DNA of 64,000 nucleotides from Selaginella moellendorffii. Taxonomy: Eukaryota > Plantae > Lycopodiophyta. The notes below the pieces were generated by a model. It was not told the DNA's origin. It worked only from the letters and a program-made list of their open reading frames with translations, and searched no databases. The stretch covers positions 2,840,603-2,904,602 of the forward strand of contig NW_003314262.1 of assembly GCF_000143415.4 (NCBI RefSeq), in the 5' to 3' direction. Of this stretch, positions 23,585 to 57,630 are shown one piece after another. The first letter of the stretch is position 1. Every line of letters begins with the position of its first letter. The position numbers and the translations under genes are program-made.

Positions 23585-24347
23585 GCTTAGCAAGGGTGGT
23601 CTCAACACTAATTTTTGATTTTTCCGATGAAATAATAGGAGCAGCACCTAGCAAGAAGACAACAGACGTATTTTTGTTCCGGGTACAACTTTTTGTTTGT
23701 TACGTGCATTGGCAATCAATTTTTCCTTTGTTCATGGTTCTTGTTTCATGAGTCCCCTTCTCGTGTTTTAGTTTGTTCTTGAAAACTTGAAGCAAAACCC
23801 TGCTGGATGAACCAAAGCGTCAACTGAATCACGATCAGACTTCCCGGATGCAAACTTTCAAGGGACCAATTTGTTTATCCATTTTAACTCTCGCGCTATA
23901 CCAAGTTTCCATTGAAATAAAGAAACAACAAACAGAGAAGTTGAAAACACTAACAAACTCAAACGACAAGTCACTGTCTTCATCTGCATCACTCCCTTCT
24001 TCAATCCCTGAAAACATCTCCAGCTGGGCCTGTAGAGCCTTGCAATGCCAGCAAACTCTTGCTCGAAAACCTCAAACTTCCGGAAGTAGTGGCCAGCCGA
24101 AAGCTTTTGGAAAGCCTCGCCAACACCCAAGCATCGTCTTCGTCCGGGCTGTAACGGCTGCAACGGTCGAAGTCCATTATCTCCACATCGTAGAAATCCG
24201 CAGAAGAAAAAGGAAAGAAAGCTTCGTCAATTGTTTCGAAATGATACTTTTTTGTCACCTTTATTTTTTGAAAAGAAACGGTTTATGTTTATTTATCCAT
24301 AAGCTATTAGGCCTGCTTCGTTCAAATAAGTTAGAAACCCTACCAGG

Positions 24348-24986
24348 ATGGAGGTTTTTAAGAAGGAAGGATTTAGCGGCATGGGTGCTTTGGGCAGTCC
24401 ATCTGATTATTTCACTGACTGCAATCAAAAGCTTATCAAGTTTCGCATGTGTGCGATCCCAGTGGATAGGGAATCAAGAGCTACCAGGTTTGCAAGTGCC
24501 GTGAAATGTATGCTACAACACCCTTTTAAAGGAGCCCCAATGCTAGTCTTTTGTAACGACAAGGATACTGCATATGAAATCAAACAGGTTTTGGATGCCA
24601 AGAGAGTGACAATGGCAACAGTAACTTTAGTGGAGGAATTGAGCACTTTGGAGAAAAAGAGGGTCAAAGACAAGAGAGCGGTGGTTATTGTCACAAAAGA
24701 TGTGATTGACAAGGTCTGTTTGCCTGGAATTTTTAAGGTGGTGGTGACCTATGATAAACTGAGCGCATCAAATCTGGAGACTTTATTGAGTTGGACAAAA
24801 TTTGATACTCGATTTCTTCCTGGTTTCTGGCCTTGTGTGGTTACTCTATATCAGAACGAGGAGTTTTTGGAAAGCATCAAGCAGTTAGCACATTGTGTCT
24901 GCATGACTAAATTGTACGAGAGAGAGCGGACAATGCAGAAATTCAGTGATGCATATGCGGATTTCTTGTTTAGTCCGAAAGCATAG
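24348..24986 (+). CDS. Intronless 212-aa orphan protein resembling a degenerate SF2/DEAD-box helicase C-terminal (RecA2) domain; intact copy
   Basis: MLVFCNDKDTAYEIKQVL resembles motif IV; VIVTKDVIDKVCLPGIFKVVVTYD resembles motif V; telo-box AAACCCTA just upstream of the ATG. Confidence 0.55.
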   Translation: MEVFKKEGFSGMGALGSPSDYFTDCNQKLIKFRMCAIPVDRESRATRFASAVKCMLQHPFKGAPMLVFCNDKDTAYEIKQVLDAKRVTMATVTLVEELSTLEKKRVKDKRAVVIVTKDVIDKVCLPGIFKVVVTYDKLSASNLETLLSWTKFDTRFLPGFWPCVVTLYQNEEFLESIKQLAHCVCMTKLYERERTMQKFSDAYADFLFSPKA

Positions 24987-25387
24987 GTCGTTTCTGCATT
25001 TTGCTAACTTCTATTCGGTTCTAGTCACAAGAAAGTTGAATAAGTTTCATTTTCTGGTTTAGTAATCATATGCTTCTCAAGAAAAGGTGGTGGGAGCTAA
25101 ATTTCATGTTTTCGCTTTTTCTTATTAAAGAGGAAAGTTGATCCTTTCAAAACGACTATTTCATGGTTTGGCACATAGAAATCAATGTCTCGTGTTCTGG
25201 CTGCCGTCAAATTTATACCATTTCTGTGATAATTGGATACATTACGTCTAACGACTATGTCAAGCATAACATGCTGGCTAAATAGTCAGAACCGAGTGAC
25301 GCTGTAGCAATCTCGCTGGACTTGGTCTCCACTTCCTCCATCCTATAAATTGCCTCCACTTCCAATCCACCACACAGCAGCAAGTTT

Positions 25388-25422
<35 letters not shown>

Positions 25423-25455
25423 TCTCACTACACTTCGAAAGTTTCTTCTACCAAG

Positions 25456-25857
25456 ATGGCGAGCAAGTCCCAGCTGATGCTTCTGGCCATGTTTGTGACA
25501 GTCCTCCTGGTTGGAGTGGACGTTGGTGGCATCGCAAGCGCAGCAGCCCAGCAGAAATGCAAGTCTGGATGGAACTGGGACGGCTACAAGTGCATCCAGT
25601 GTCCCAAAGGGTGGTACTGGTATAGCAACGATTGCCACAGATGCCTCTCCGGTTGGAAGTGGAGTGGAAGCAAATGCGTGAGCTGCCCGAGCAACTGGTA
25701 CTGGTACAACAACAAGTGCCACCAATGCCCGTCCGGATGGAAGTGGAGTGGAAGCAAGTGTGTGAGCTGCCCGAGTGACTGGTATTGGTATAACAACGAT
25801 TGCCACCGCTGTCCGTATGGCTGGAAATGGAGCAAGGCTCACTGCACCAAGAACTAA
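25456..25857 (+). CDS. Secreted Trp/Cys-rich 14-aa tandem-repeat protein, copy 1 (133 aa)
   Basis: Signal peptide to AAA|QQ; 7 x C-x-x-x-W-x-W-x4-C-x-x; TATAAAT at 25344; AATAAA downstream. Confidence 0.9.
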   Translation: MASKSQLMLLAMFVTVLLVGVDVGGIASAAAQQKCKSGWNWDGYKCIQCPKGWYWYSNDCHRCLSGWKWSGSKCVSCPSNWYWYNNKCHQCPSGWKWSGSKCVSCPSDWYWYNNDCHRCPYGWKWSKAHCTKN

Positions 25858-25996
25858 GTCAGTTAACTCCAGCGAGAAAGAAGTACCTTCCAATTCGTTA
25901 GTTCATTGCGTCTTGTCCTCGAGATAATGTGCCAGCGTCTTTGGCAATTGATTTGATTCGAATAAAAGCACCTACTTGTTTTGAATATCGAACCTG

Positions 25997-27267
25997 TCAT
26001 CGTGCTGCAGCAGCAACCTCGGCAGCAAAGTCCTTTTCAAGCCTGGGAAAATGAAGCCAAGAATTGGTTCGTGAAGGCTTGGATTGTAACAAGGACTTAC
26101 TTTTCGATCCCCTCCCCGACTTCTATTCGCAGGAATCCCTCGATCTTGGCCGTCTTCCCGATTTCTTTGGCCGTCTCTTTTAGCAGGACCTGAAAGATCA
26201 AATCCTGAGGCTGATGAGACACATTCGAATGATGTGACTTACTTTGATCCGTTTCGTTTCGTCTGCAACGTACTTCTGCTCCAGAAGAACAACCTCTTCC
26301 ATGTATTTGGCAAGCCTGCCTTCGACCATCTTCTGAACGACGTTCTCTGGCTTTCCAGCAGTCGAGGCCTGCAACAACAAAACAAAAAAACAATAGACAA
26401 TCAATAAAAGGCAGAGAAAAACAAATGCCTTGCACCTGTGCTTTGCAGATGTTCCGCTCATGCTCCAGTACTTCAGAGTCCACGAGTTCCTTAGACAAAA
26501 ACAGCGGCCTTGCAGCAACAACATGCATTGCAAGAGACGAGCCCAAGCTTTTCAGTGTTTCCGAATGCGAGCCTTCTTGATCATCTTCAACCTCGAGCGA
26601 AACGAGCCCCGCGAGCCGAGATAAACCTTTCAGAATAAATCTGTGAGAAACGAGCAAACAGTGGAATTTACAAGTACCTGATGCCGGACTCATGTGCAAA
26701 TACGAGGACACGATCCCTCTTTGCGAAGACATATATAAAGCTCTTCGAAGTCTCACATTTTCTCCAGTGATAGCGGCAACTTCCGAGACTGCGTCGCGTA
26801 CACAAAGCTCTCTGGTGATTGATGCGTGATCCAGCTTCACATTTACAAGCTGGAAATTTCCAAACATGAAAGATCTTTCCTTCGAGAGAACAGACTTACC
26901 TCTAAATCGTGCAAATCAAGAGCAGCTGGTTTAGAAGAAAATTGTTGGACAGCTTCCAATGTGGATGCCGCTTTTGCGACTGACAGCACCTGGAAAAATC
27001 GTGAGCAAAACTAAAAGCCGAAGAAGATCATCCATCACTTACAAGGCTCTGGAAGAGATCGTTTCGAGCAACAAAGTCAGTCTCGCTGTTAATCTCTATG
27101 ACCGCGGCACCTTTCTCGAAGTGTGCCAGTCCAAGCAATCCTTCCGCAGCCACACGAGAAGATTTCTTCGTCGCGGCAGCAAGGCCCTTCTTCCTCAGCT
27201 CAGTAAACGCATCCTCTATAGAAAAATCCAAAGAAAAAATAATTCTTCCTTCCTTTAACATTAGCAT
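25997..27267 (-). pseudogene. 5'-truncated mitochondrial EF-Ts, copy 1 (native exon 1 missing; possible substitute ATG at 27267)
   Basis: [55 protein letters not shown]; sequence stops inside intron 1 at the duplication junction. Confidence 0.85.
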
Positions 27268-27463
27268 TATCTCCACATCGTAGAAATCCGCAGAAGAAAA
27301 AGGAAAGAAAGCTTCGTCAATTGTTTCGAAATGATACTTTTTTTGTCACCTTTATTTTTTGAAAAGAAACGGTTTATGTTTATTTATCCATAAGCTTCTG
27401 GAACCTTTGATTCTTATTACGCCTAATTCTGCTTCTTTCAAATAAGTTAGAAACCCTACCAGG

Positions 27464-28600
27464 ATGGAGGTTTTTAAGAAGGAAGGATTTAGCGGCATGG
27501 GTGCTTTGGGCAGTCCATCTGATTATTTCACTGACTGCAATCAAAAGCTTATCAAGTTTCGCATGTGTGCGATCCCAGTGGATAGGGAATCAAGAGCTAC
27601 CAGGTTTGCAAGTGCCGTGAAATGTATGCTGCAACACCCTTTTAAAGGAGCCCCAATGCTAGTGTTTTGTAATGGCAAGGATACCGCGTATGAAATCAAA
27701 CAGGTTTTGGATGCCAAGAGAGTGACAATGGCAACAGTAACTATAGTGGAGGAATTGAGCACTTTGGAGAAAAAGAGGGTCAAAGACAAGAGGGCAGTGG
27801 TTATTGTCACAAAAGATGTGATTGACAAGGTCTGTTTGCCTAGAATTTTTAAGGTGGTGGTGACCTATGATCTCGCTATAATTGGTATCAGAGCAAATGG
27901 CACAAGTTTGATTCTCATTGATTAGGGGCTATCTAAAATATAATATACCCTTGAGCAAGGTATATTTCTACTCCTAAATTTGAAAATCGTACATATGCGT
28001 ATGTCCTTCCTTTTGTGGAACATCTTAGACGAAGGTATTCACCATGGGATTACAGTACAAGTGGATGACTAATTGTCTTAGATGGAATAGTTGATCTACA
28101 CAATGGAGGGATTGGTAGATTTAGTGTGGAAATGGAAGTGTTAGTTCCCTTTGGCTCAGTAGGGGTTGGTAATCAATAGTCAATGAGGACATTGACATCT
28201 TTGAAGGGGGGTGAGTGTAGCGCATGTGATTATAGAATGAAATTTGAATATACTGTCACCGTGGATCTTTGGAACCTTGGGAGGGAGATAAATGGGGATA
28301 AAATGGGCTCTCTCATCAAGTTATTATCCCTTTTTCAATTGGTTTAAAGGGAGAGAAATAAAGTTTGATAAACTGAGCACATCAAATCTGGAGACTTTAT
28401 TGAGTTGGACAAAATTTGATACTCGATTTCTTCCTCGTTTCTGGCCTTCTGTGGTTACTCTATATCAGAACAAGGAGTTTTTGGAAAGCATCAAGCAGTT
28501 AGCACATTGTGTCTGCATGACTAAATTGTACAAGAGAGAGCGGACAATGCAGAAATTCAGTGATGCATATGCGGATTTCTTGTTTAGTCCGAAAGCATAG
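27464..28600 (+). pseudogene. Helicase-C-like ORF copy 2, interrupted by a TRIM insertion
   Basis: Matches 24348-24986 except for a 494-bp insert after VVTYD. Confidence 0.85.
27872..28365 (+). mobile_element. Non-autonomous LTR element (TRIM-like), circularly permuted with one split LTR
   Basis: CGCTATA (27874-80), then PBS TGGTATCAGAGC (27883-94), ~320 bp internal, PPT GAAGGGGGG (28203-11), then TGTAGCG (28216); TGAT on both flanks. Confidence 0.75.
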
Positions 28601-29052
28601 ATCGTTTCTGCATTTTGCTAACTTCTATTTGGTTCTAGTCACAAGAAAGTTGAATAAAGTTTCATTTTCTGGTTTAGTAATCATATGCTTCTCAAGAAAA
28701 GGTGGTGGGAGCTAAATTTCATGTTTTCGCTTTTTCTTATTAAAGAGGAAAGTTGATCCTTTCAAAACGACTATTTCATGGTTTGGCACATAGAAATCAA
28801 TGTCTCGTGTTCTGGCTGCCGTCAAATTTATACCATTTCTGTGATAATTGGATACATTACGTCTAACGACTATGTCAAGCATAACATGCTGACTAAATAG
28901 TCAGAACCGAGTGACGCTGTAGCAATCTCGCTGGACTTGGTCTCCACTTCCTCCATCCTATAAATTGCCTCCACTTCTAATCCACCACACAGCAGCAAGT
29001 TTTGCGAGAGAGAGAGAGATCTCACTACACTTCGAAAGTTTCTTCTACCAAG

Positions 29053-29454
29053 ATGGCGAGCAAGTCCCAGCTGATGCTTCTGGCCATGGTTGTGACAGTC
29101 CTCCTGGTTGGAGTGGACGTTGGTGGCATCGCAAGCGCAGCAGCCCAGCAGAAATGCAAATCTGGATGGAACTGGGACGGCCACAAGTGCATCCAGTGTC
29201 CCAAGGGCTGGTACTGGTATAGCAACGATTGCCACAGATGCCTCTCCGGTTGGAAGTGGAGTGGAAGCAAATGCGTGAGCTGCCCGAGCAACTGGTACTG
29301 GTACAACAACAAGTGCCACCAATGCCCGTCCGGATGGAAGTGGAGTGGAAGCAAGTGTGTGAGCTGCCCCAGTGACTGGTATTGGTATAACAACGATTGC
29401 CACCGCTGTCCGTATGGCTGGAAATGGAGCAAGGCTCACTGCACCAAGAACTAA
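29053..29454 (+). CDS. Secreted Trp/Cys-rich repeat protein, copy 2
   Basis: Intact 133-aa ORF, 2 aa different from copy 1. Confidence 0.9.
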   Translation: MASKSQLMLLAMVVTVLLVGVDVGGIASAAAQQKCKSGWNWDGHKCIQCPKGWYWYSNDCHRCLSGWKWSGSKCVSCPSNWYWYNNKCHQCPSGWKWSGSKCVSCPSDWYWYNNDCHRCPYGWKWSKAHCTKN

Positions 29455-29593
29455 GTCAGTTAACTCCAGCGAGAAAGAAGTACCTTCCAATTCGTTATTT
29501 CATTGCATCTTGTCCTCGAGATAATGTGCCAGCGTCTTTGGCAATTGATTTGATTCGAATAAAACCACCTACTTGTTTTGAATATCGAACCTG

Positions 29594-30865
29594 TCATCGT
29601 GCTGCAGCAGCAACCTCGGCAGCAAAGTCCTTTTCAAGCCTGGGAAAGTGAAGCCAGGAATTGGTTCGTGAAGGCTTGGATTGTAACAAGGACTTACTTT
29701 TCGATCCCCTCCCCGACTTCTATTCGCAGGAATCCCTCGATCTTGGCCGTCTTCCCGATTTCTTTGGACGTCTCTTTTAGCAGAACCTGAAAGATCAAAT
29801 CGTGAGCCTGATGAGACATATTCGAATGGTGTGACATACGTTGATCCATTTCGTTTCGTCTGCAACGTACTTCTGCTCCAGAAGAACAACCTCTTCCATG
29901 TATTTGGCAAGCCTGCCTTCGACCATCTTCTGGACGACGTTCTCTGGCTTTCCAGCAGTCGAGGCCTGCAACAACAAAACAGAAAAACAATAGACAATCA
30001 ATAAAAGGCAGAAAAATAACAAATGCCTTGCACCTGTGCTTTGCAGATGTTCCGCTCATGCTCCAGTACTTCAGAGTCCACGAGTTCCTTAGACAAAAAC
30101 AGAGGCCTTGCAGCAACAACATGCATTGCAAGAGACGAGCCCAAGCTTTTCAGTGTTTCCGAATGCGAGCCTTCTTGATCATCTTCAACCTCGAGCGCAA
30201 CGAGCCCCGCGAGCCGAGATAAGCCTTTCAGAATAAATTTGTGAGAAACGAGCAAACAGTGGAATTTACAAGCACCTGATGCCGGACTCATGTGCAAATA
30301 CGAGGACACGATCCCTCTTTGCGAAGATATATAGAAAGCTCTTCGAAGTCTCACATTTTCTCCAGTGATAGCGGCAACTTCCGAGACTGCGTCGCGTACA
30401 CAAAGCTCTCTGGTGATTGATGCGTGATCCAGCTTCACATTTACAAGCTGGAAATTTCCAAACATGAAAGATCTTTCCTTCGAGAGAACAGACTTACCTC
30501 TAAATCGTGCAAATCAAGAGCAGCTGGTTTAGAAGAAAATTGTTGGACAGCTTCCAATGTGGATGCCGCTTTTGCGACTGACAGCACCTGGAAAAATCGT
30601 GAGCAAAACTAAAAGCCGAAGAAGATCATCCATCACTTACAAGGCTCTGGAAGAGATCGTTTCGAGCAACAAAGTCAGTCTCGCTGTTAATCTCTATGAC
30701 CGCGGCACCTTTCTCGAAGTGTGCCAGTCCAAGCAATCCATCCGCAGCCACACGAGAAGATTTCTTCGTCGCGGCAGCAAGGCCCTTCTTCCTCAGCTCA
30801 GTAAACGCATCCTCTATAGAAAAATCCAAAGAACAAATAATTCTTCCTTCCTTTAACATTAGCAT
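29594..30865 (-). pseudogene. 5'-truncated mitochondrial EF-Ts, copy 2
   Basis: Same exons and same truncation/junction as copy 1. Confidence 0.85.
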
Positions 30866-32859
30866 TATCTCCACATCGTAGAAATCCGCAGAAGAAAAAG
30901 GAAAGAAAGCTTCGTCAATTGTTTCGAAATGATATACTTTTTTTGTCACCTTTATTTTTTGAAAAGAAACGGTTTATGTTTATTTATCCATAAGCTTCTG
31001 GAACCTTTGATTCTTAATTCTGCTTCTTTCAAATAAGTTAGAAACCCTACCAGGATGGAGGTTTTTAAGAAGGAAGGATTTAGCGGCATGATGAGAGGCC
31101 TTGCGCTGGCTGAGGCATGCCAGTTTCCGCATAGGCATCCATCTGGGAGAAGATGTCCAGAGCGTCTTGGATATGGCCTGATCTAGAACTCCACACCACT
31201 GCATCTCATTTGTCCCTTCGGAAGCACTCCTTGCAAGACCGAGCCTCTGGGCCTTGGAGCAGTTGATAAGCTCTGCTACCACAACTGGATCCGATTTAGG
31301 CCCTAAAATGGGCACTCGATCGTGAAGAAAGCTCATTTGTAGCAATGCATGCTTGCAACTGGTAAACGTGAACGTATCAGCCTTACCACCTTCAAGAGAG
31401 CTTCTTCGGGATAGCTGGTCTTGGACCATGGTGTTCCATCTCTCAAACTGCTAGCTTCAAAACATGTGACTTCAAAGCATTTTACCAACAACTAGATCAT
31501 CCCTGGTCAGAACATCTCCTCCAGTATAACACAGAAACTCCATGGCTCTTGAGCTGATCATGCCTGTGCTTATCCCAGACCTTGAAGAACTCGAGAATCC
31601 GTGGAGGAGAGCAACCAGCGTAAAGTTGCTTGCTAAGAAACCTTGTTTGAGAGCAGGCAGCCCAATGCAAACTCAACGAATCTAGAGTTGTCATTCTCCG
31701 GCATCATTGCATCCCCAGAATAAACAGCAGGGAAGAATGACAAGGCAACATTTTATCCACCACTTGAGAAATATGGTCCAGTTGAAGGATGTTCCAGGAT
31801 GGAGTGCTATTCCACTCGAATTGCTTCCATGATCCTTTGCTTCTGAGCGAGGCAGAGGATCATCGCTGTCCCTAGCCCCACATCCTTGTTTTCAGAGAAA
31901 TTCTCAAACACAGTCATTGCTTTCTCTGGATTTCCACAGCGGCCGTAGCAGCGCACCAATGCAGTGGACATGGCAACGTCCCATTCCTCACGACACAAGC
32001 ATGGATCTCTTCTCCATTGCCCAGATCGTCACAGCAAAGGCATCCTCTCGTAAATTGCAAATGCCTCATTGCATTGCCCGCACTGGGCATGAGCGTCGAT
32101 CATCGCGTTCCAGGCCAGCAAATCTTTCTGTCCAAGATTCTTAACAGCCAGACGAGCTTCATGGAGCAATCCACACATCCTCCGAATCTCTGTGGCAATC
32201 TGCAAATCCCTGCTAAGCCCACACTCCTCGAGGAGCGATCGAACAAGGTTGCCCTGTTCCAGCGTCAAGCAAGACCTCACCAGAGGGAGTGAACCTCCGG
32301 CTTCACTCCGTCCAAGCACATCTCCCCAAGAACATTAAATCTCTCATCCCTGCTAGCGTAGGCTGCGATCAAGAAGCCCCAAGGTAAGACATTCTTGTCG
32401 GCGATGGCATCGAATGCCGTGCGTGTGTCGTCCGTGCTGCCGCATTTGCCATACATCTCCACAAGAAGATTGCCGATCCTGGTGAGCGAGTGGCGGCCAT
32501 GGACTCGCAGCTGCGCAATCAGAGCGTGCAAGAGCTTGCCTGCTTCCAGGGCATTTAATCTGCCACATCTCAACACAAGAGCTCCAAACTCCTCCGCGTG
32601 GATCGCAATGTGGACACTGTTAACAGTTTATCCATGTCAGCATCGCTGGAAGAAAACCACGTGGCACTAATGTTTATAAGCCACGTATAAAGTGGTGCGT
32701 GGCCACGAAAACTTTCACCAGTCGGTAGGGTCGCAGTATCTCGCAGCTCAACGCAGCTCTTGATGCTTCCATTCCGCAGTTTGGCTCTCGTGGACTTGTT
32801 CCCAGAGTAAGTTGTAAGTGCTTAGACCAAAGAGTCGAGGCGCGTCTAACTTAACACAG

Positions 32860-33581
32860 ATGTTTCCATCAGAAACGATGCAGCATCTCTTGACTGCGAG
32901 GAAAGCTGAGATACCGCTCAAACCACACGCAGAAGGGTGGCACGCTCGTTGGCCGGGAGGCATTGGTGATCCATTTGAGCCTTACATGGTGAGGATTAAG
33001 TACATCCTATCATGAGAGCTGACTTGCGAGGAGTTTGCAGCAACTTCTCAAGCAATTCCTTAACATCGCATTGACATTTCACGCAAGGTAAGGAGAAACT
33101 TTCTCTATTCTCAGAAGAAGTAACCTTAGTTTCGTGCGTAAACAGGGCGATGGAGCAGCTAACAACGTTTGGAGCTGTAAGAGCAGCCAGCAAGAATGCA
33201 AGGGATGCTGCTTACATCAGGACACAAGCGGCGGCGGCGGGAATTTCAGTCAAGGAGTACCAAAGGTTATTGGACATGTTCATGAAGATCGACTCTGAAA
33301 ACACAGGGTAAGCAAAAACTCCTTTTTTACTTGGACAGCGACTCAATTTCCAAGTAACTTGCAGGAAAATCACCAAGGGCGAGCTCATGGTGAAGATGAA
33401 ACGCGACAAAGATGTCTGTGTACTTTCAAAAAGTCTCCTCTCCAACGGTGCTAAAAACTTGAATCTCTTTTGTGTGCTGTAGATCGCTGCCTTCATGCAG
33501 TTGTCCAGAGCACGAAACAAGGATGGCCGACGAGAGTCCTTCGAGAGTGTCTTCAACCGGATTGACAACACAGGCGAGTGA
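32860..33581 (+). CDS. Five-exon EF-hand calcium-binding protein, probably 3'-truncated
   Basis: Exons 32860-32988, 33041-33087, 33146-33307, 33365-33413, 33483-33581 splice in frame: ..LLDMFMKIDSENTGKITKGELM..FESVFNRIDNTGE*. Confidence 0.65.
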
Positions 33582-34134
33582 AGGATGGCAGGCAGATCCC
33601 CGCAGAGCTTGGTCATGGCGGGATTGTTCTTGCTGAGGAGGAGCCGGAGGTTCTGGAGCTGGAAAATCTCCTTGGACTGCCCCAAGTTATCTGTGGAGCA
33701 GCTTGAGGCCTGGCCTTCATGATGACCAAAGGTTGAGGATGATGCTCTTGAGGTCTTGGCAATCGCCATCATGCTGTGGATCCTTAGGACCTTCTTCAGG
33801 ACGTAGAGCTGGCACAGGAAGGATGGATTGCTAAGCACTTGATCGTGCACTGCTGGGCCTGGCTTCAAGCTGCCACAATGCTTGCAATCTGGGCATCAAT
33901 AATCCAAGTATTGCTATGGTTCTTGGACTGCTGCGAGTTCTCCTCCCAACCTGAGGCTGCTCTGATCACGATGCTCCGAGCCCAGCACACCAAGCCATTC
34001 CTGAGCCCTCAGAAGTTATGTGTCATGGATTAGTCATTGATGCTCATGTGAATAAACATTTGCCACGTGGACGTGCAAAAAATTTACATGTGCAGAGCTA
34101 CAAATTGCATGCCATAAGTTAGTTAAAAGGCCAA

Positions 34135-34430
34135 GAGTTGCTAGATAATGGTTGTTCTCACAACTTCATGTCAAGAGCAATGCTACAGTGGCTGGGCTTG
34201 ATGACTAAGGAACCATTGGACGTCAGGGTGGCAAATGGCAGTGACGACGGTTCCTGTCTTTGTTCTTCCAAATCCTGCAAAGTCGTTCATAGTGATGACA
34301 TATGCAAGTGATGCTGGAATCAGTGTTGTGCTCATGCAAGACAATAATGTAATCGCTTTTGAAAGTCATAAATTTTCAAGTGCTGAATCTCATTACTCAG
34401 TTTATGATAAAGAATTTATTGCCAGAAACA
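34135..34430 (+). mobile_element. Ty3/gypsy pol remnant (protease and RNase H-like fragments)
   Basis: LLDNGCSHNFMS..VRVANG; PVFVLPNPAKSFIVMTYASDAGISVVLMQDNNVIAFESHKFSSAESHYSVYDKE; second copy at about 52360-52645 on the - strand. Confidence 0.75.
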
Positions 34431-36337
34431 CATTCTCACGGGGGGTGGATTTTGAAGTCATGTCGATCATCAATGCGCTACAGCATTAAAAGTTTCAATT
34501 AGTCAGTGATAACAATAGAAAAAAATAACATTTCGGGACAAGATGATTACAAATTTCAACAAACATCACTGGAGTGTCAACTTCCGGGCCATGATGCATT
34601 GCTTGGAGCGTAATCCGTGTGCATAGTCCTTCTAAGTTCGAAAGTTAACCAGCATTTCTACCTTGCTTGACGGCAACTTCTTTTAAGAGTCCGAAGGTGG
34701 TGAAACAAATTTGACAGAAAAGAGCAAGAAAATTAAAGCTTACTAGTCTGATAAAAGTTACAGCAGTTTGTTCATGAAGATAATCTCCATGCCACAATGT
34801 TGTGATGGTGGAGATTGTCTTCGCCAACAATCGAGCCAGCAGTCTCACATTTCCCATAGGGAAGTTACAAGAACAAATTTCTAAACAAGGGTGGGGTTTG
34901 AGCCACAAGCAAAGTCACATCCTTGGACCTGTTGGAATATCTGAGGAATCTAGTGCTCTTCCACAATCATGAGGCCATATCTCAGTCTCCCACCATCCTC
35001 CAAAAGCTCTCCACCATCGCACACGGTAGCAATTCCTTGCTTTTAAGAGAAGAGTTAGACTCTCCCATCTCTTGCGCAGCTTGAGCACCCAACTCGTCCA
35101 AGAAGATCAACCATATGAAACAGGTGACCACCAACCGCTCCTGGTCAAGATACTCATAAAAGTCACTTGATTTGGCTCCACTGTTGCATCCTCTGGAACA
35201 GTTCCATTGACTTAGAGTTCCAGCTGTGCTAAGTGTGAGCTGAGATCATGGCAGTCCATGAGATTGGAGTGGAAGCTCATCCTGTCAAACCTTTGCATAA
35301 GAGCATTGTCTCCGACTTGAACATGAAATCCCGGGTGCTTTGGGCAGTCCATCTGATTATTTCACTGACTGCAATCAAAAGCTTATCAAGTTTCGCATGT
35401 GTGCGATCCCAGTGGATAGGGAATCAAGAGCTACCAGGTTTGCAAGTGCCGTGAAATGTATGCTACAACACCCTTTTAAAGGAGCCCCAATGCTAGTCTT
35501 TTGTAACGACAAGGATACCGCATATGAAATCAAACAGGTTTTCAATGCCAAGAGAGTGACAATGGCAACAGTAACTGTAGTGGAGGAATTGAGCACTTTG
35601 GAGAAAAAGAGGGTCAAAGACAAGAGAGCGGTGGTTATTGTCACAAAAGATGTGATTGACAAGGTCTGTTTGCCTGGAATTTTTAAGGTGGTGGTGACCT
35701 ATGATAAACTGAGCGCATCAAATCTGGAGACTTTATTGAGTTGGACAAGATTTGATACTCGATTTCTTCCTGGTTTCTGGCCTTGTGTGGTTACTCTATA
35801 TCAGAACGAGGAGTTTTTGGAAAGCATCAAGCAGTTAGCACATTGTGTCTGCATGACTAAATTGTACGAGAGAGAGCGGACAATGCAGAAATTCAGTGAT
35901 GCATATGCGGATTTCTTGTTTAGTCCGAAAGCATAGAGTGTTTCTGCATTTTGCTAACTTCTATTCGGTTCTAGTCACAAGAAAGTTGAATAAGTTTCAT
36001 TTTCTGGTTTAGTAATCATATGCTTCTCAAGAAAAGGTGGTGGGAGCTAAATTTCATGTTTTCGCTTTTTCTTATTAAAGAGGAAAGTTGATCCTTTCAA
36101 AACGACTATTTCATGGTTTGGCACATAGAAATCAATGTCTCGTGTTCTGGCTGCCGTCAAATTTATACCATTTCTGTGATAATTGGATACATTACGTCTA
36201 ACGACTATGTCAAGCATAACATGCTGGCTAAATAGTCAGAACCGAGTGACGCTGTAGCAATCTCGCTGGACTTGGTCTCCACTTCCTCCATCCTATAAAT
36301 TGCCTCCACTTCTAATCCACCACACAGCAGCAAGTTT

Positions 36338-36371
<34 letters not shown>

Positions 36372-36401
36372 CACTACACTTCGAAAGTTTCTTCTACCAA
36401 G

Positions 36402-36803
36402 ATGGCGAGCAAGTCCCAGCTGATGCTTCTGGCCATGGTTGTGACAGTCCTCCTGGTTGGAGTGGACGTTGGTGGCATCGCAAGCGCAGCAGCCCAGCAG
36501 AAATGCAAATCTGGATGGAACTGGGACGGCCACAAGTGCATCCAGTGTCCCAAAGGCTGGTACTGGTATAGCAACGATTGCCACAGATGCCTCTCCGGTT
36601 GGAAGTGGAGTGGAAGCAAATGCGTGAGCTGCCCGAGCAACTGGTACTGGTACAACAACAAGTGCCACCAATGCCCGTCCGGATGGAAGTGGAGTGGAAG
36701 CAAGTGTGTGAGCTGCCCCAGTGACTGGTATTGGTATAACAACGATTGCCATCGCTGTCCGTATGGCTGGAAATGGAGCAAGGCTCACTGCACCAAGAAC
36801 TAA
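36402..36803 (+). CDS. Secreted Trp/Cys-rich repeat protein, copy 3
   Basis: Intact 133-aa ORF, protein identical to copy 2. Confidence 0.9.
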   Translation: MASKSQLMLLAMVVTVLLVGVDVGGIASAAAQQKCKSGWNWDGHKCIQCPKGWYWYSNDCHRCLSGWKWSGSKCVSCPSNWYWYNNKCHQCPSGWKWSGSKCVSCPSDWYWYNNDCHRCPYGWKWSKAHCTKN

Positions 36804-36921
36804 GTCAGTTAACTCCAGCGAGAAAGAAGTACCTTCCAATTCGTTATTTCATTGCGTCTTGTCCTCGAGATAATGATTTGATTCGAATAAAACCACCTAC
36901 TTGTTTTGAATATCGAACCTG

Positions 36922-38417
36922 TCATCGTGCTGCAGCAGCAACCTCGGCAGCAAAGTCCTTTTCAAGCCTGGGAAAATGAAGCCAGGAATTGGTTCGTGAA
37001 GGCTTGGATTGTAACAAGGGCTTACTTTTCGATCCCCTCCCCGACTTCTATTCGTAGGAATCCCTCGATCTTGGCCGTCTTCCCGATTTCTTTGGACGTC
37101 TCTTTTAGCAGAACCTGAAAGATTAAATCGTGAGCCTGATGAGACATATTCGAATGGTGTGACATACGTTGATCCGTTTCGTTTCGTCTGCAACGTACTT
37201 CTGCTCCAGAAGAACAACCTCTTCCATGTATTTGGCAAGCCTGCCTTCGACCATCTTCTGGACGACGTTCTCTGGCTTTCCAGCAGTCGAGGCCTGCAAC
37301 AACAAAACAAAAAAACAATAGACAATCAATAAAAGGCAGAGAAAAACAAATGCCTTGCACCTGTGCTTTGCAGATGTTCCGCTCATGCTCCAGTACTTCA
37401 GAGTCCACGAGTTCCTTAGACAAAAACAGCGGCCTTGCAGCAACAACATGCATTGCAAGAGACGAGCCCAAGCTTTTCAGTGTTTCCGAATGCGAGCCTT
37501 CTTGATCATGTTCAACCTCGAGCGAAACGAGCCCCGCGAGCCGAGATAAACCTTTCAAAATAAATCTGTGAGAAACGGAGCAAACAGTGGAATTTTACAA
37601 GTACCTGATGCCGGACTCATGTGCAAATACGAGGACACGATCCCTCGTTGCGAAGATATATAGAAAGCTCTTCGAAGTCTCACATTTTCTCCAGTGATAG
37701 CGGCAACTTCCGAGACTGCGTCGCGTACACGAAGCTCTCTGGTGATTGATGCGTGATCCAGCTTCACATTTACAAGCTGAAAATTTCCAAACATGAAAGA
37801 TCTTTCCTTCGAGAGAACAGACTTACCTCTAAATCGTGCAAATCAAGAGCAGCTGGTTTAGAAGAAAATTGTTGGACAGCTTTCAATGTGGATGCCGCTT
37901 TTGCGACTGACAGCACCTGGAAAAATCGTGAGCAAAACTAAAAGCCGAAGAAGATCATCCATCACTTACAAGGCTCTGGAAGAGATCGTTTCGAGCAACA
38001 AAGTCAGTTTCGCTGTTAATCTCTATGACCGCGGCACCTTTCTCGAAGTGTGCCAGTCCAAGCAATCCTTCCGCAGCCACACGAGAAGATTTCTTCGTCG
38101 CGGCAGCAAGGCCCTTCTTCCTCAGCTCAGTAAACGCATTCTCTATAGAAAAATCCAAAGAAAAAATAATTCTTCCTTCCTTTCCACAATCTCATCAAGA
38201 GCATACCTTCGTTCCATTCACATTTCACCAGCACTTCCTTGACATCCTTGATCGGCGCCCCGGTCCGCTCGCGCAGCGTCTTGATGAGATCGGTGCGCGA
38301 GGAAGCATCGACAGAGAAAGATTTCGCACCGATTGCAGTGATTCTAGGCAATCCACGCACCGATCGGCCCCTACAAATCGCCGTCGCCGCGCGCCATAGC
38401 GGAGCTCCTCTCGCCAT
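36922..38417 (-). CDS. TSFM: Mitochondrial elongation factor Ts, complete copy
   Basis: Arg-rich transit peptide [21 protein letters not shown]; [17 protein letters not shown]; [10 protein letters not shown]; ends [11 protein letters not shown]. Confidence 0.92.
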
Positions 38418-38513
38418 TGCAAGGCACATTTTAGGGCTTGGACAAGAAAGAAAGAATTTGATGGGGTTTTAGAAAAAATTGCCATTGACGGGATTCGAAC
38501 ACTCGACGTATTG

Positions 38514-48309: not shown

Positions 48310-49105
48310 AATCTTTCACATGGTGTAGAAATCGTCTCTTTTTTCAATTGTTTGCAGTTAAGAGCTTAAAATATGAGAAGATTCCAAAAGAATGTCCGAA
48401 TATTTCAAAAGAATCTGCGAGAAGAGATCTGGAAGGTGGGAAAAAGTTGGTTAGGGCAGTGGAAGAGATGGAGCACGAGTGGAGTGCAGAGCCAGAGCTT
48501 GAGGATGTGGTGCAAAGGAGCAGACATGGTTACTGGGTGGCTGTGAGTGAGGTGTCCTGAGCAGGTTTGGCTTGCGAGCAATCAGAGAATACGCACTGCA
48601 TTGTGGACAGGCATGGCTATGCCTGTTAGCTGATGTATTGGCAGAGTTTCTTATGAACCAAGAGCAATTTATTTCTCCATTGTAGTTTCAGAAGTGTTGA
48701 TTTAGGATTAACTTGTGTGTGCTTGTAATAGTTGTCATTTTGATGACAACTACTACACAAATCCCAAGTCAACACTTCTGGAACTACAATGGAGAAAGAA
48801 ATTGCTATTAGTTCATAAGCAACTCTGCCAATACATCAAGTAAGATGTGTAGCATAGTGTGTATTCTCTGATTGCAGACTTACTCCATGTGACACCTCAC
48901 TCACATCCGCTGTGTGACCATATCTGCTCTCTTCTGTGCTACACCCTCTGGCCTCAGCTCTACTTAGCCGTGTTCCACTGGATCTCTTCGCACAGATTCT
49001 TTTAGAATATTCAAATATTCTTTTAAAATCTTCTCAACTTCTCATAAAGCTCTTAACTGCAAAAAATTGAAAAAAGAGACAATTTCTGCCATCGACAGAT
49101 GGAAG
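48310..49105. repeat. Long imperfect inverted repeat (foldback), arms ~380-420 bp
   Basis: gtctcttttttcaatt..tgcagttaagagctt pairs with aagctcttaactgca..aattgaaaaaagagac; central tagttgtcat-ttt-gatgacaacta at about 48729-48752. Confidence 0.9.
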
Positions 49106-49838: not shown

Positions 49839-51840
49839 AGTGTCCACATTGCGATCCACGCGGAGGAGTTTGGAGCTCTTGTGTTGAGATGTGGCAGATT
49901 AAATGCCCTGGAAGCAGGCAAGCTCTTGCACGCTCTGATTGCGCAGCTGCGAGTCCATGGCCGCCACTCGCTCACCAGGATCGGCAATCTTCTTGTGGAG
50001 ATGTATGGCAAATGCGGCAGCACGGACGACACACGCACGGCATTCGATGCCATCGCCGACAAGAATGTCTTACCTTGGGGCTTCTTGATCGCAGCCTACG
50101 CTAGCAGGGATGAGAGATTTAATGTTCTTGGGGAGATGTGCTTGGAGGGAGTGAAGCCGGAGGTTCACTCCCTCCGGTGAGGTCTTGCTTGACGCTGGAG
50201 CAGGGCAACCTTGTTCGATCGCTCCTCGAGGAGTGTGGGCTTAGCAGGGATTTGCAGATTGCCACAGAGATTCGGAGGATGTGTGGATTTCTCCATGTCT
50301 GGCTGTTGAGAATCTTGGACAGAAAGATTTGCTGGCCTGGAACGCGATGATCGACGCTCATGCCCAGTGCGGGCAATGCAATGAGGCATTTGCAATTTAC
50401 GAGAGGATGCCTTTGCTGTGACGATCTGGGCAATGGAGAAGAGATCCATGCTTGTGTCGTGAGGAATGGGACGTTGCCATGTCCACTGCATTGGTGCGCT
50501 GATACGGTCGCTGTGGAAATCCAGAGAAAGCAATGACTGTGTTTGTGAAAACAAGGATGTGGGGCTATGGACTGCGATGATCCTCTGCCTCGCTCAGAAG
50601 CAAAGGATCATGGAAGCCATTCGAGTGGAATAGCACTCCATCCTGGAACATCCTTCAACTGGACCATATTTCTCAAGTGGTGGATAAAATGTTGCCTTGT
50701 CATTCTTCCCTGCTGTTTATTCTGGGGATGCAATGATGCCGGAGAATGACAACTCTAGATTCGTTGAGTTTGCATTGGGCTGCCTGCTCTCAAACAAGGT
50801 TTCTGAGCAAGCAACTTTATGCTGGTTGCTCTCCTCCAAGGATTCTCGAGTTCTTCAAGGTCTGGGATAAGCACAGGCATGATCAGCTCAAGAGCCATGG
50901 AGTTTCTGTGTTATACTGGAGGAGATGTTCTGACCAGGGACGATCTAGTTGTTGGTAAAATGCTTTGAAGTCACATGCTTTGAAGCTAGCTGTTTGAGAG
51001 ATGGAACACCATGGTCCAAGACCAGCCATCCCGAAGAAGCTCTCTTGAAGGTGGTAAGGCTGATACGTTCACGTTTACCAGTTGCGAGCATGCATTGCTA
51101 CAAACAGTCAGTACAGTGTTACAAAAAATGGCGTGGAATGGCCCTCAACATTTTTTAGTTCTTTTTGTGCAAGTTCAGCATAATCCACGCTCCATCCCAG
51201 ATCCTCATGACCCTAACCATGATTTCCTGCGGTAATCGGCATCCTTATCAACTGCTCCAAGACCCAGAGGCTCGGTCTTGCAAGAGGGACAAATGAGATG
51301 CAGTGGTGTGGAGTTCCAGATCAGGCCATATCCAAGACGCTCTGGATATCTTCTCCCAGATGGATGCCTATGCGGAAACTGGCATGCCTCAGCCAGCGCA
51401 AGACCTCTCATTGGGATTTCATGTTCAAGTCGGAGACAATGGTGGTCAACTCTCTTATGCAAAGGTTTGACAGGATGAGCTTCCACTCCAGGAGCAGATA
51501 TCATCTCATGGACTGCCATGATCTCAGCTCACACTTAGCACAGCTGGAACTCTAAGTCAATGGAACTGTTCCAGAGGATGCAACAGTGGAGCCAAATCAA
51601 GTGACTTTTATGAGTATCTTGACCAGGAGCGGTTGGTGGTCACCTGTTTCATATGGTTGATCTTCTTGGACGAGTTGGGTGCTCAAGCATGCGCAAGAGA
51701 TGGGAGAGTCTAACTCTTCTCGTAAAACCAAGGAATTGCTACCGTGTGCGATGGTGGAGAGCTTTTGGAGGATGGTAGGAGACTGAGATATGGCCTCATG
51801 ATTGTGGAAGAGCACTAGATTCCTCAGATATTCCAACAGG
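49839..51840 (+). pseudogene. PPR pseudogene, deletion-riddled relative of 57631-59907
   Basis: Colinear nucleotide similarity to the intact PPR, with frameshifts and deletions. Confidence 0.88.
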
Positions 51841-52895
51841 TCCAAGGATGTGACTTTGCTTGTGGCTCAAACCCCACCCTTGTTTAGAAATTTGTTCTTG
51901 TAACTTCCCTATGGGAAATGTGAGACTGCTGGCTCGATTGTTGGCGAAGACAATCTCCACCATCACAACATTGTGGCATGGAGATTATCTTCATGAACAA
52001 ACTGCTGTTTCAGCTCTAACTTTTATCAGACTAGTAAGCTTTAATTTTCTTGCTCTTTTCTGTCAAATTTGTTTCACCACCTTCGGACTCTTAAAAGAAG
52101 TTGCCGTCAAGCAAGGTAGAAATGCTGGTTAACTTTCGAACTTAGAAGGACTATGCACACGGATTACGCTCCAAGCAATGCATCATAGCCCGGAAGTTGA
52201 CACTCCAGTGATGTTTGTTGAAATTTGTAATTATCTTGTCCCGAAAATGTTATTTTTTTCTATTGTTATCACTGACTAATTGAAACTTTTAATGCTGTAG
52301 CGCATTGATGATCGATATGCACTTCAAAATCCACCCCCCGTGAGAATGTGTTTCTGACAATAAATTCTTTATCATAAACTGAGTAATGAGATTCAGCACT
52401 TGAAAATTTATGACTTTCAAAAGCAATTACATTATTGTCTTGCATGAGCACAACACTGATTCCAGCATCACTTGCATATGTCATCACTATGAACGACTTT
52501 GCAGGATTTGGAAGAACAAAGACAGGAGCCGTCGTCACTGCCATTTGCCACCCTGACGTCCAATGGTTCCTTAGTCATCAAGCCCAGCCACTGTAGTATT
52601 GCTCTTGACATGAAGTTGTGAGAACAACCATTATCCAGCAACTCTTGGCCTTTTAACTAACTTATGGCATGCAATTTGTAGCTTTGCACATGTAAATTTT
52701 TTGCACGTCCACGTGGCAAATGTTTATTCACATGAGCATCAATGACTAATCCATGACACATAGCTTCTGAGGGCTCAGGAATGGCTTGGTGTGCTGGGCT
52801 CGGAGCATCATGATCAGAGCAGCCTCAGGTTGGGAGGAGAACTCGCAGCAGTCCAAGAACCATAGCAATACTTGGATTATTCATGCCCAGATTGC

Positions 52896-55689: not shown

Positions 55690-56575
55690 CAGGTGTTCAA
55701 GCTAGATATCGTGACCGTTCGCTATTGCATCATCCTGTAAACCTTAAATTGCAAACCCGACTACCGAACAAGGTAAACGTACCTCTTCTAGTTTCATGAT
55801 GGCTTGGGACGCGCCGGCAGCATCAAGCAGAAGGATGTTGTAGTCCTTGATGTCCTTTTTCTTCTTGGTCACATCAGTGTTCATAGCTTGGATCTGCACA
55901 AAATATTGTTGTAAGAAAAACTATTTTGCGAGAACATAAACAACGAAAAGAAACAATACTTCAGAATCCACTTCCGCTCCGTCTTGCCGTGTCACAGACG
56001 TGAGTACGTCAAACAAAATACCAGCTGTCTGATAAGCTTTCGCAAGCGACGCCCTGTTAATCCAAATCACAGTGAAGCTTTGACATTCAAATTCATGGCT
56101 ATGAGACCTGTCCTGATGGTCGGCCTCCGAAGCCCTGACGTGTTTGTCGTAATAGTTTTGGTAGAAGCGCTGCATCTCCCGCGCATCGCTTCTTTCACGC
56201 CTCGCAAGCCTGGAGGGCTCCTCATCCTGCCCAAAAGAAATAAGAACACCAAGACAGCGAAAAAAAAAGAAAACTCCAGACCTTCTCCAGCCGCAGCAGA
56301 AGCGCCGTCTTGAACTGCCGGACTCCTCGACCACTCGAAGAAGGATCATCATAGTGAGCTCTGTCGTAAGCATAGAATCGACCTATCAATCCACGAGAAG
56401 AACATAGATAAGAAACCGACCATTCTAAAGAATCGCTATATAAAAACTTACAAAGATAAAGCCACTCGTTGGCTGTCTTGGCAACACGGAGTATGGCGGC
56501 AATAGGACCCAAGGACGATGGCACGACCTCGCTATCGAATTCGGTCCGGAACGTCCCATCGTCGTCATTGCTCAC
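55690..56575 (-). pseudogene. Callose synthase (GSL/CalS) 5' fragment
   Basis: FDSEVVPSSLGPIAAILRVA; DPSSSGRGVRQFKTALLLRLEK; SDAREMQRFYQNYY; LAKAYQTAGILFDVL; YNIL; deletion in exon 1 and no glucan-synthase domain downstream. Confidence 0.85.
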
Positions 56576-56847
56576 GACGATGGAGATCGATCAGAGGCGG
56601 CGTAATATCGAATCTCTACTCCAATAGATGATGGATCCCAAACCTGCAAGCATTGTGAGCCTGAAATCCTGGACAGGCAGGAGATGCGAGCTCGCTACCT
56701 AATCGCCGAGGCGCCAAAACCCCAGGGTTCTTGCTCCTCGCCTAGACGATGAACAGCGATAGTCCCAGCACGAAAGCCGCCATTTGCTTCTGGCGCTCCC
56801 TGCGGGGTGTCAAGAACACTTGCGGTTCGATTCTTCCACTCTTAATC

Positions 56848-57604: not shown

Positions 57605-57630
57605 TGGTCGAATTAAGCAACCTTTACTAA

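What the first reader, a model, noticed from the sequence alone, without database searches (positions are those of the whole stretch)
31091..35333. 4.2 kb insertion is an exact circular permutation, suggesting eccDNA integration
The right end (..gaaatcccg) and left end (atgagaggcc..) join without gap to rebuild the PPR sequence ctcat|cgggatttc, which is contiguous at 59301-59313 and at 51411/51412. The target catg|ggtgct lost no bases and has no TSD (1-nt microhomology). A second new junction near 33580, where an EF-hand gene meets an LRR-like fragment, is the candidate circularisation point. With the TRIM above, two independent circle-like insertions hit the same ORF in adjacent repeat units.
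Basis: partly seen in the sequence, partly recalled or inferred. Interest (0 to 1): 0.8.

Follow-up and report, generated by a model that had tools for sequence, protein, structure and literature searches.

The report
Circle-shaped DNA insertion in spikemoss
One of the two chromosome copies of the spikemoss Selaginella moellendorffii carries a 4.2-kb patchwork of dead-gene pieces whose order is an exact rotation of its source, the footprint expected when a free DNA circle is cut once and pasted into a chromosome, a process documented in mammals and yeast but hardly at all in plant germlines.

Summary
Window 31091-35333 (4243 bp; S. moellendorffii GL377566.1) interrupts the third unit of a 3.1-kb tandem array of mitochondrial EF-Ts gene copies. 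Four uninterrupted sites, two in the window and two on the other haplotype, show that no target base was lost or duplicated. The two insert ends abut to the base in a sibling copy (49839-52895) and in the intact PPR gene (57631-59907).

- a 3-kb chunk "S" (decayed PPR gene plus a retrotransposon RNase H fragment), rotated;
- 965 bp of an old pseudogene copy of an EF-hand gene;
- 300 bp of unknown origin; the "LRR-like" label found no support.

The other haplotype lacks the insertion and the sibling copy.

My best reading (about 0.6) is that a multi-fragment extrachromosomal circle was opened inside S and ligated into a break by end joining. This remains an inference. The donor carrying the 1265-bp non-PPR part was not found, and the whole genome could not be searched.

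The neighbouring "TRIM circle" sits at the same site in both haplotypes, so it is older, and its permutation is unverifiable. The "same ORF hit twice" point is not significant.

This is a new member of a known kind, of moderate interest.

The parts
24175..38183 (-). Tandem array of three ~3.1-kb units carrying mitochondrial EF-Ts gene copies. The complete gene XP_024535210.1 lies at 36921-38428; units 1 and 2 are 5'-truncated copies. This array is the recipient locus.
   Evidence: Self dot-plot; Pfam EF_TS; gene calls in L003; unit alignment showing 1.3-2.2% substitutions in a mosaic pattern.
31091..35333 (.). The 4243-bp insertion. It is present only in unit 3 of this haplotype and has no TSD, no target loss, and no terminal repeats of LTR or TIR type.
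31091..32618 (-). Segment Y: the 5' part of a decayed PPR gene (family S), running from the break point back to about 16 codons after the start.
   Evidence: 97% identity to the reverse complement of 51411..49839. It shares deletions with the sibling copy relative to the intact paralogue.
32619..33583 (+). Segment Za: an old pseudogene copy of the EF-hand gene LOC9649878. It holds a promoter-proximal piece (32625-32664), then exons for residues 102-286 of 330, and ends 10 nt into an intron. The first ~100 codons are missing. It is annotated as a 103-aa EF-hand_7 gene.
   Evidence: phmmer hit P0158; Selaginella orthologue P0172; 88-90% nt identity to L004/L007; tblastn; alignments A3 and A4; gene call in L003.
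33584..33883 (.). Segment Zb: 300 bp of unknown origin between the EF-hand fragment and the start of X.
   Evidence: No match in the window or in L001-L007 at word size 7. No Pfam hit. No usable atlas hit.
33884..35333 (-). Segment X: the 3' part of the PPR pseudogene, about 1 kb of its downstream DNA, and an LTR-retrotransposon RT/RNase H fragment (33926-34512, coding on the + strand).
   Evidence: 96.7% identity to the reverse complement of 52895..51413; Pfam RT_RNaseH 1e-14 for 34235-34489; match to the gypsy-like fragment on the other haplotype.
49839..52895 (+). S_w: the linear sibling copy of S (3057 bp) with exactly the same two outer boundaries as S in the insert. It lies in AT-rich DNA and is also absent from the other haplotype.
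57631..59907 (+). Intact PPR paralogue (XP_002961545.2), about 88% nt identical to S. It serves as the outgroup showing that the two insert ends are contiguous (59301-59313).
   Evidence: Pfam PPR; 100% hit P0001; three-way alignment.
24376..24393 (+). Empty target site in unit 1. The same 18-mer occurs at 27492-27509 in unit 2.
30980..31429 (-). ORF that starts in the PPR fragment and reads across the left junction into the truncated EF-Ts copy. It forms the N-terminus of RefSeq model XP_024536172.1 (453 aa).
   Evidence: ORF list; gene call in L003; P0183 N-terminal sequence is PPR-derived.
55734..56847 (+). 90-91% copy of the 5' end of a callose synthase gene. At the parent locus this gene lies directly next to the EF-hand gene. 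It sits in the same hemizygous block as S_w.
   Evidence: BLAST of L004 and L007 against the window; absent from L006.

Best explanation
A 4243-bp extrachromosomal DNA circle was integrated into a double-strand break in the EF-Ts array.

Composition of the circle (shown). It was a patchwork. One part was a 3-kb linear chunk S, consisting of a decayed PPR gene plus a retrotransposon pol fragment. The second was a 965-bp fragment of an old EF-hand pseudogene, and the third was a 300-bp piece of unknown origin.

Assembly and integration (inferred). The pieces were joined end to end and closed into a ring by end joining. The ring was later opened by one break inside S, with both ends kept intact. 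It was then ligated into a blunt or 1-nt-overlap break in the third array unit by classical non-homologous end joining. This would explain why there is no target-site duplication, no lost base, and an exact one-turn rotation.

Timing and consequences. The event happened on one haplotype only. It was roughly contemporaneous with the appearance of a second, linear copy of S about 15 kb away on the same haplotype. The junctions, the composition, the empty sites and the hemizygosity are shown. The circular topology of the intermediate and the end-joining pathway are inferred. The insertion sits at the start codon of a 5'-truncated EF-Ts copy and gives it an annotated PPR-derived N-terminal extension. 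No function is claimed for this.
For: 1. Exact cyclic shift. The insert ends map to adjacent bases in the sibling copy and in the intact paralogue.
2. Clean target. Four empty sites are identical across the junction, two of them on the other haplotype.
3. No transposon hallmarks. There is no TSD, LTR or TIR.
4. Internal junctions consistent with fragment ligation. The EF-hand homology ends 10 nt into an intron. S ends at the same two bases as in the sibling copy but is joined to different DNA.
5. Likelihood argument (my own calculation). A single cut of such a ring falls in S with probability 2978/4243 = 0.70. A random linear chain of four fragments gives the Y...X arrangement in 16 of 384 orders and orientations, or 0.04.
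6. Recent and local. The insertion and the sibling copy are both absent from GL377581.1. S_i and S_w differ by 1.2% substitutions, against 0.55-1.0% between the haplotypes.
7. Precedent. AB->BA insertions in human genomes are almost all intrachromosomal (bioRxiv 10.64898/2026.09.03.749254). The signature and its false positives are described in PMC7188851.
Against: - No circle was observed, and no sequencing reads were examined.
- No donor locus containing Za or Zb next to S was found, so a tandem or composite donor elsewhere in the genome is not excluded.
- The sibling copy has a private 140-bp patch and lacks Z, so the direct source of S is uncertain.
- The other haplotype has two array units rather than three and may have lost the relevant unit junction by unequal crossing-over. 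It shows that the site can be empty, but not strictly that it is the ancestral allele of unit 3.
- Four fragments joined as a linear chain remain possible, at the 4% level per event.
Confidence: 0.6

Rival explanations
1. Linear multi-fragment capture. A local shattering or repair event released linear fragments (Y, X, Za, Zb, with S broken once). These were ligated as a chain directly into the chromosomal break without ever forming a ring.
For: The insert is a patchwork with blunt-looking junctions. A second hemizygous patchwork block (49079-57659) holds the other S copy and the neighbouring piece of the same callose-synthase/EF-hand paralogue. This fits one fragmentation event feeding two insertion sites.
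Against: Only 16 of 384 orders and orientations of four fragments place Y first and X last in the right orientation (my calculation). The two halves of S keep every base at the break, which is more natural for one cut in a ring.
Confidence: 0.15
2. Replicative template switching (MMBIR, FoSTeS or SDSA with several switches), or a linear copy of exactly one period taken from a tandem donor array (S-Z)n elsewhere in the genome.
For: The region is rich in duplicated PPR, EF-Ts and retroelement fragments. PMC7188851 lists tandem-duplication false positives.
Against: Copying would have to start and stop at adjacent donor bases and return to the target without loss or gain. For a 4.2-kb period that is a coincidence of about 1 in several thousand. 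Junction overlap is only 1 nt, whereas microhomology-driven switching usually shows 2 nt or more. No tandem S array exists in the window or in the fetched loci.
Confidence: 0.13
3. Assembly artefact in the 2011 Sanger whole-genome assembly, for example a mis-join among 97-98% identical repeats or a chimeric clone.
For: The site lies in a 3-unit tandem array. A 97% sibling of S lies 15 kb away. The assembly contains two haplotypes.
Against: The flank and the insert share no sequence at either junction that could cause a false overlap. The window has no N gaps. Two coordinated false joins giving an exact rotation plus three further internal junctions are very unlikely. The insert copy differs from the sibling by 33 substitutions and several indels, so it is a distinct locus.
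Confidence: 0.05
4. A transposable element carrying captured gene fragments (Pack-type DNA transposon, Helitron, or a retroelement circle) that inserted by its own enzyme.
For: S has been placed at two sites with identical boundaries. Its two ends carry a 12-nt imperfect direct repeat (10 of 12 matches, read). S also contains a retrotransposon pol fragment.
Against: There is no TSD, TIR or LTR, no Helitron 5'-TC/3'-CTRR ends, and no A|T target. The break is inside the PPR pseudogene, not at an element end. No transposase or integrase ORF is present.
Confidence: 0.04

Closest known systems
eccDNA-mediated duplication / AB->BA insertions in human germline genomes (Takahashi & Innan 2020, PMC7188851; bioRxiv 10.64898/2026.09.03.749254)
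   Same: The inserted sequence is a cyclic shift of a contiguous source. Source and insertion lie on the same chromosome. Integration is by end joining without a TSD.
   Different: This case is in a lycophyte. The ring is a chimera of at least three unrelated fragments. Junction overlap is 1 nt, whereas the preprint reports enrichment for 5 nt or more. The full source interval was not located.
Serial translocation by circular intermediates at the cattle KIT locus (Durkin et al. 2012, Nature 482:81; cited in PMC10462705; details from my own knowledge)
   Same: It shows a heritable circularly permuted insertion, with a circularisation junction inside the insert and the original order rebuilt by joining the insert ends.
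   Different: The cattle segments are hundreds of kb, carry a functional gene and give a phenotype. This case is 4.2 kb of pseudogene fragments with no known phenotype.
Multi-fragment (chimeric) eccDNA and its reintegration in cancer cells (reviewed in PMC9527254)
   Same: The ring is built from several non-adjacent genomic fragments and then re-enters a chromosome.
   Different: Those events are somatic and occur in tumours. This one is fixed in a germline haplotype of a plant.
Filler-DNA or gene-fragment capture at double-strand breaks in plants (NHEJ filler insertions; from my own knowledge)
   Same: It gives patchwork insertions of unrelated genomic pieces without a TSD.
   Different: Filler DNA is normally tens to hundreds of bp and linear. 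It does not predict an exact rotation of a 3-kb segment.

Membership tests
eccDNA-mediated (AB->BA) insertion | [quoted passage not shown] | tested here: met
   The ends map to 51411 and 51412-51413 of the sibling copy and are contiguous at 59301-59313 in the intact paralogue.
eccDNA-mediated (AB->BA) insertion | The recipient site is known in its uninterrupted state. | tested here: met
   Two paralogous units in the window and two units on the other haplotype are empty.
eccDNA-mediated (AB->BA) insertion | The source exists as a linear, non-tandem interval covering the whole insert. This excludes the tandem-duplication false positive described in PMC7188851. | tested here: inconclusive
   A linear sibling covers S only (72% of the insert). 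The 1265-bp Z part has no donor in the window or in L001-L007. No genome-wide search was possible.
eccDNA-mediated (AB->BA) insertion | A circularisation junction lies inside the insert. | tested here: met
   There are three internal novel junctions (32618/9, 33583/4, 33883/4). Which of them closed the ring cannot be told.
eccDNA-mediated (AB->BA) insertion | Physical evidence for the circle, or read support for the junctions. | not testable with these tools
   No read data or Circle-seq data were accessible.
LTR retrotransposon / TRIM | Terminal direct repeats, PBS and PPT, and a 4-6 bp TSD. | tested here: not met
   The insert has no long terminal direct repeats and no TSD. Only an internal pol fragment is present.
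Helitron | 5'-TC and 3'-CTRR ends with a 3' hairpin, and insertion between A and T. | tested here: not met
   The ends read ATGAG... and ...TCCCG, and the target is CATG|GGTG.
TIR DNA transposon / Pack-type element | Terminal inverted repeats and a TSD. | tested here: not met
   No inverted repeat pair lies at the termini, and there is no TSD.

The most novel reading that the evidence does not exclude
A single local fragmentation event on this haplotype produced free DNA pieces from an old pseudogene cluster (PPR chunk S; callose-synthase 5' end; EF-hand fragment). S was copied extrachromosomally. One copy was stitched with other pieces into the 8.6-kb hemizygous block at 49079-57659. The other was closed with the EF-hand piece into a multi-fragment ring that re-entered the germline 15 kb away. 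If so, this would be chimeric eccDNA acting as a vehicle for gene-fragment shuffling, and for the creation of a PPR::EF-Ts fusion model, in an early-diverging land plant.
Probability: 0.2. Interest if true: 0.7.

Novelty: new member of a known kind. Interest (0 to 1): 0.5.

Why it matters
Heritable reinsertion of non-transposon DNA circles is documented for cattle, yeast and, recently, human genomes. For plants the literature I could search treats it as possible but hardly shown (PMC10462705, PMC10948907).

This locus offers base-exact junctions. It also offers paralogous and allelic empty sites and a linear sibling copy on the same haplotype, and the haplotypes are heterozygous in the sequenced plant. 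The mechanism is therefore directly testable by PCR, long reads and Circle-seq in a small, well-assembled genome.

The locus also shows how such events can create new annotated open reading frames, here a PPR-derived N-terminus on an EF-Ts copy. In addition, annotated 'genes' such as the 103-aa EF-hand protein at this site are fragments carried in by the insertion.

Tried and rejected
- **Native 5' region of the PPR gene.** I tested whether the DNA just beyond the S boundary is the native 5' region of the PPR gene. An 8-mer matches at the same offset as in the intact paralogue, but local alignment is not above shuffles. I rejected this as evidence.
- **GL377581.1 locus L002.** I first took it for the allele. 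It is a 90% rearranged paralogous piece.
- **Exact protein look-ups.** Look-ups of raw ORFs found nothing. P0002 and P0184 are not on record for contig retrieval.
- **The functional EF-hand gene as direct parent of Za.** Its two alleles (L004, L007) are only 88-90% identical to Za, so the direct parent is an older pseudogene copy that I could not find.
- **Origin of Zb.** blastn at word size 7, tblastx, Pfam and the protein atlas all gave nothing.
- **TRIM-like insert as a tRNA-derived SINE.** ARAGORN and Rfam found nothing. The match to the tRNA-iMet primer-binding site and a polypurine tract fit a TRIM better.
- **Short matches between the target's right flank and the insert.** The matches (14/16 and 13/14 nt) are about what chance gives, roughly 0.2 expected each. 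I did not use them.
- **Earlier notes of this scan.** The search of earlier findings by sequence and by words gave no related locus.
Full report
**Where we are.** The intact PPR ORF at 57631-59907 is 100% identical to Selaginella moellendorffii XP_002961545.2. The fetched loci place the window on scaffold GL377566.1 of GCA_000143415.2, with record coordinate = window + 2,840,602. The insertion is GL377566.1:2,871,693-2,875,935. The window contains no N.

**The recipient.** A self dot-plot shows three tandem units of about 3.1 kb between 24175 and 38183. They carry copies of the mitochondrial elongation factor Ts gene on the minus strand (Pfam EF_TS; gene calls). The unit next to the DHBP-synthase gene holds the complete 369-aa gene. 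The other two units lack its first exon. The units differ by 1.3-2.2% substitutions in a mosaic pattern, which suggests gene conversion.

**The observation.**
- The flanks of 31091-35333 are contiguous in units 1 and 2, at 24383/24384 and 27499/27500.
- The empty site reads ...GCGGCATGGGTGC.... The filled site reads ...GCGGCATG + insert + GGTGC.... No target base is missing or duplicated, and one G can be assigned to either side.
- 31091-32618 matches the reverse complement of 51411..49839. 33884-35332 matches the reverse complement of 52895..51413.
- Base 35333 fills the one remaining position. It corresponds to C in the intact paralogue and to T in the 51412 copy, a CpG-to-TpG change.
- The insert is therefore an exact one-turn rotation of a sequence that is contiguous elsewhere.

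**Anatomy of the insert.** I call the shared 3-kb segment S.
- S in the insert (S_i) and the copy at 49839-52895 (S_w) have identical outer boundaries but different neighbours.
- S is a composite of old DNA. It is a PPR gene about 88% identical to the intact paralogue. It lacks roughly the first 16 codons and carries many deletions shared by S_i and S_w. It also has about 1 kb of downstream DNA holding an LTR-retrotransposon RT/RNase H fragment (Pfam 1e-14).
- Between the two ends of S in the insert lie 1265 bp with no match in the window.
- A phmmer search with the first EF-hand exon alone (by reference; the exons were not joined) found a conserved 330-350-aa plant EF-hand protein. Its Selaginella member is LOC9649878.
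- 32748-33583 is 88-90% identical to that gene on GL377632.1 and to its allele on GL377607.1, covering residues 102-286.
- 32625-32664 matches the gene's promoter-proximal DNA, so about 600 bp holding the first exons are missing.
- Homology stops 10 nt into an intron, at 33583.
- The remaining 300 bp (33584-33883) matched nothing in any locus, in Pfam or in the atlas. 'LRR-like' is therefore unsupported.
- In summary the insert is Y | Za | Zb | X, with three internal junctions.

**The other haplotype.** Cluster members of the EF-Ts and PPR proteins revealed alleles on GL377581.1, and I fetched 44 kb around them.
- That scaffold is collinear with the window, with about 1% substitutions in the genic flanks.
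- It has only two EF-Ts units, and both insertion-site equivalents are empty.
- It also lacks S_w. Where the window has 8.6 kb (49079-57659) it has a 1.5-kb gypsy-like pol fragment. Part of that fragment is 85-97% similar to the pol fragment inside S.
- Both S copies are thus private to this haplotype.
- S_i and S_w differ by 1.2% substitutions, against 0.55-1.0% between the haplotypes. They separated about when the haplotypes did.
- The unit-number difference is best explained by unequal crossing-over (my inference from which units carry the TRIM-like insert). The allelic scaffold therefore proves that empty sites exist. It does not strictly provide the ancestral allele of unit 3.

**A further link.** The window holds a 90-91% copy of the 5' end of a callose synthase gene, at 55734-56847 inside the same hemizygous block as S_w. 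At the parent locus that gene lies directly beside the EF-hand gene. The two hemizygous patchworks thus each contain one S and one of two neighbouring pieces of the same old paralogue. I could not derive a simple rearrangement connecting them, because the orientations do not fit one inversion or one excision. The coincidence still suggests a common source region.

**Mechanism.**
- An exact rotation with a clean target is what a ring cut once and ligated into a break produces. I estimate that a single random cut falls within S with probability 0.70.
- A linear chain of four fragments gives Y first and X last in the right orientation in 16 of 384 arrangements (0.04).
- Copying exactly one period from a tandem donor, or returning to the adjacent base after several template switches, needs a coincidence of about 1 in several thousand.
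- No transposon hallmark is present.
- The 1-nt overlap points to classical end joining rather than microhomology-mediated joining.
- S has the same ends in both copies but is joined to unrelated DNA. The simplest inference is that S existed as a free linear fragment. One copy was ligated into AT-rich DNA to give S_w. Another was closed with Za and Zb into a ring.
- I put 0.6 on the ring and 0.15 on a linear chain. Template switching or a tandem donor gets 0.13, an assembly artefact 0.05, and a transposon 0.04. The small remainder is left unassigned.

**Comparison with the literature.**
- The signature and its tandem-duplication false positives are described for human segmental duplications (PMC7188851).
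- A 2026 preprint reports 82 AB->BA insertions in human genomes, 80 of them intrachromosomal.
- The cattle KIT case is the classic example (cited).
- Plant papers discuss reintegration as possible but unproven.
- This is therefore a new member of a known kind. It is notable for its host, its multi-fragment composition, and its testability in a heterozygous reference plant.

**Consequences.** The insertion lies 35 nt into a hypothetical 212-aa plus-strand ORF with no Pfam domain. It also lies exactly at the ATG used by the gene model of the truncated EF-Ts copy on the other haplotype. RefSeq model XP_024536172.1 starts inside the PPR fragment and reads across the left junction. The 103-aa 'EF-hand_7' gene is the carried-in fragment. 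No function is claimed for any of these.

**The companion claim.**
- The 495-bp insert at 27872-28366 has a 12/12 tRNA-iMet primer-binding site 11 nt from its left end. It has a polypurine tract followed by TG about 160 nt from its right end, and TGAT on both sides.
- It occurs at the same site, with the same ends, on the other haplotype, so it predates the haplotype split.
- No second copy was available to show that its two ends rebuild one LTR, so 'permuted one-LTR circle' remains unverified.
- Two insertions 372 bp apart in unit coordinates have about a 24% chance expectation, so a 'hot ORF' is not supported.

**Limits.** The whole genome and the reads could not be searched. The donor of Za and Zb, and the question of which junction closed the ring, remain open.

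Noticed in passing
window 27872-28366 and L005 12715-13222: The TRIM-like insert is allelic in both haplotypes, yet the two copies differ by 10.5% substitutions, 88% of them transitions. The 366 aligned flanking bases compared in the same alignment differ by 4.4% (16 substitutions), and the array units differ by 1.3-2.2%. This suggests much faster C-to-T decay, probably driven by methylation, inside the element.
   Followed up: partly
window 49079-57659 versus L006 8441-9978: An 8.6-kb hemizygous patchwork block holds S_w, AT-rich DNA, a callose-synthase 5' fragment annotated as a 146-aa Vta1 gene, and the PPR upstream region. It replaces a 1.5-kb gypsy-like pol fragment on the other haplotype. 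It may share a source with the 4.2-kb insert.
   Followed up: partly
window 24175-38183 versus L005 10240-16923: There is copy-number polymorphism of the mitochondrial EF-Ts tandem array: three units on GL377566.1 and two on GL377581.1. The units show mosaic similarity that indicates unequal crossing-over and gene conversion.
   Followed up: partly
window 49839-49852 and 52884-52895 (ends of S): The two ends of S carry an imperfect 12-nt direct repeat, TG(T/C)CCA(C/G)ATTGC with 10 of 12 matching. It is shared by both S copies. Its meaning is unknown.
   Followed up: no
window 51104-51244: S_w carries a private ~140-bp replacement patch that is absent from S_i and from the intact paralogue. This is an indel with filler that arose after the two S copies separated.
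   Followed up: partly
L002 10001-11308 (GL377581.1:1563385-1584692): A distant paralogous piece fuses the 3' end of the DHBP-synthase/GTP-cyclohydrolase II gene with rearranged EF-Ts fragments (90% identity). It is annotated as a 223-aa chimeric protein, SELMODRAFT_411911.
   Followed up: no
L006 13877-16423 versus window 61533-61561: The other haplotype has about 2.5 kb between the PPR cluster and the P450 gene that this window lacks. This is another structural difference in the same 20 kb.
   Followed up: no
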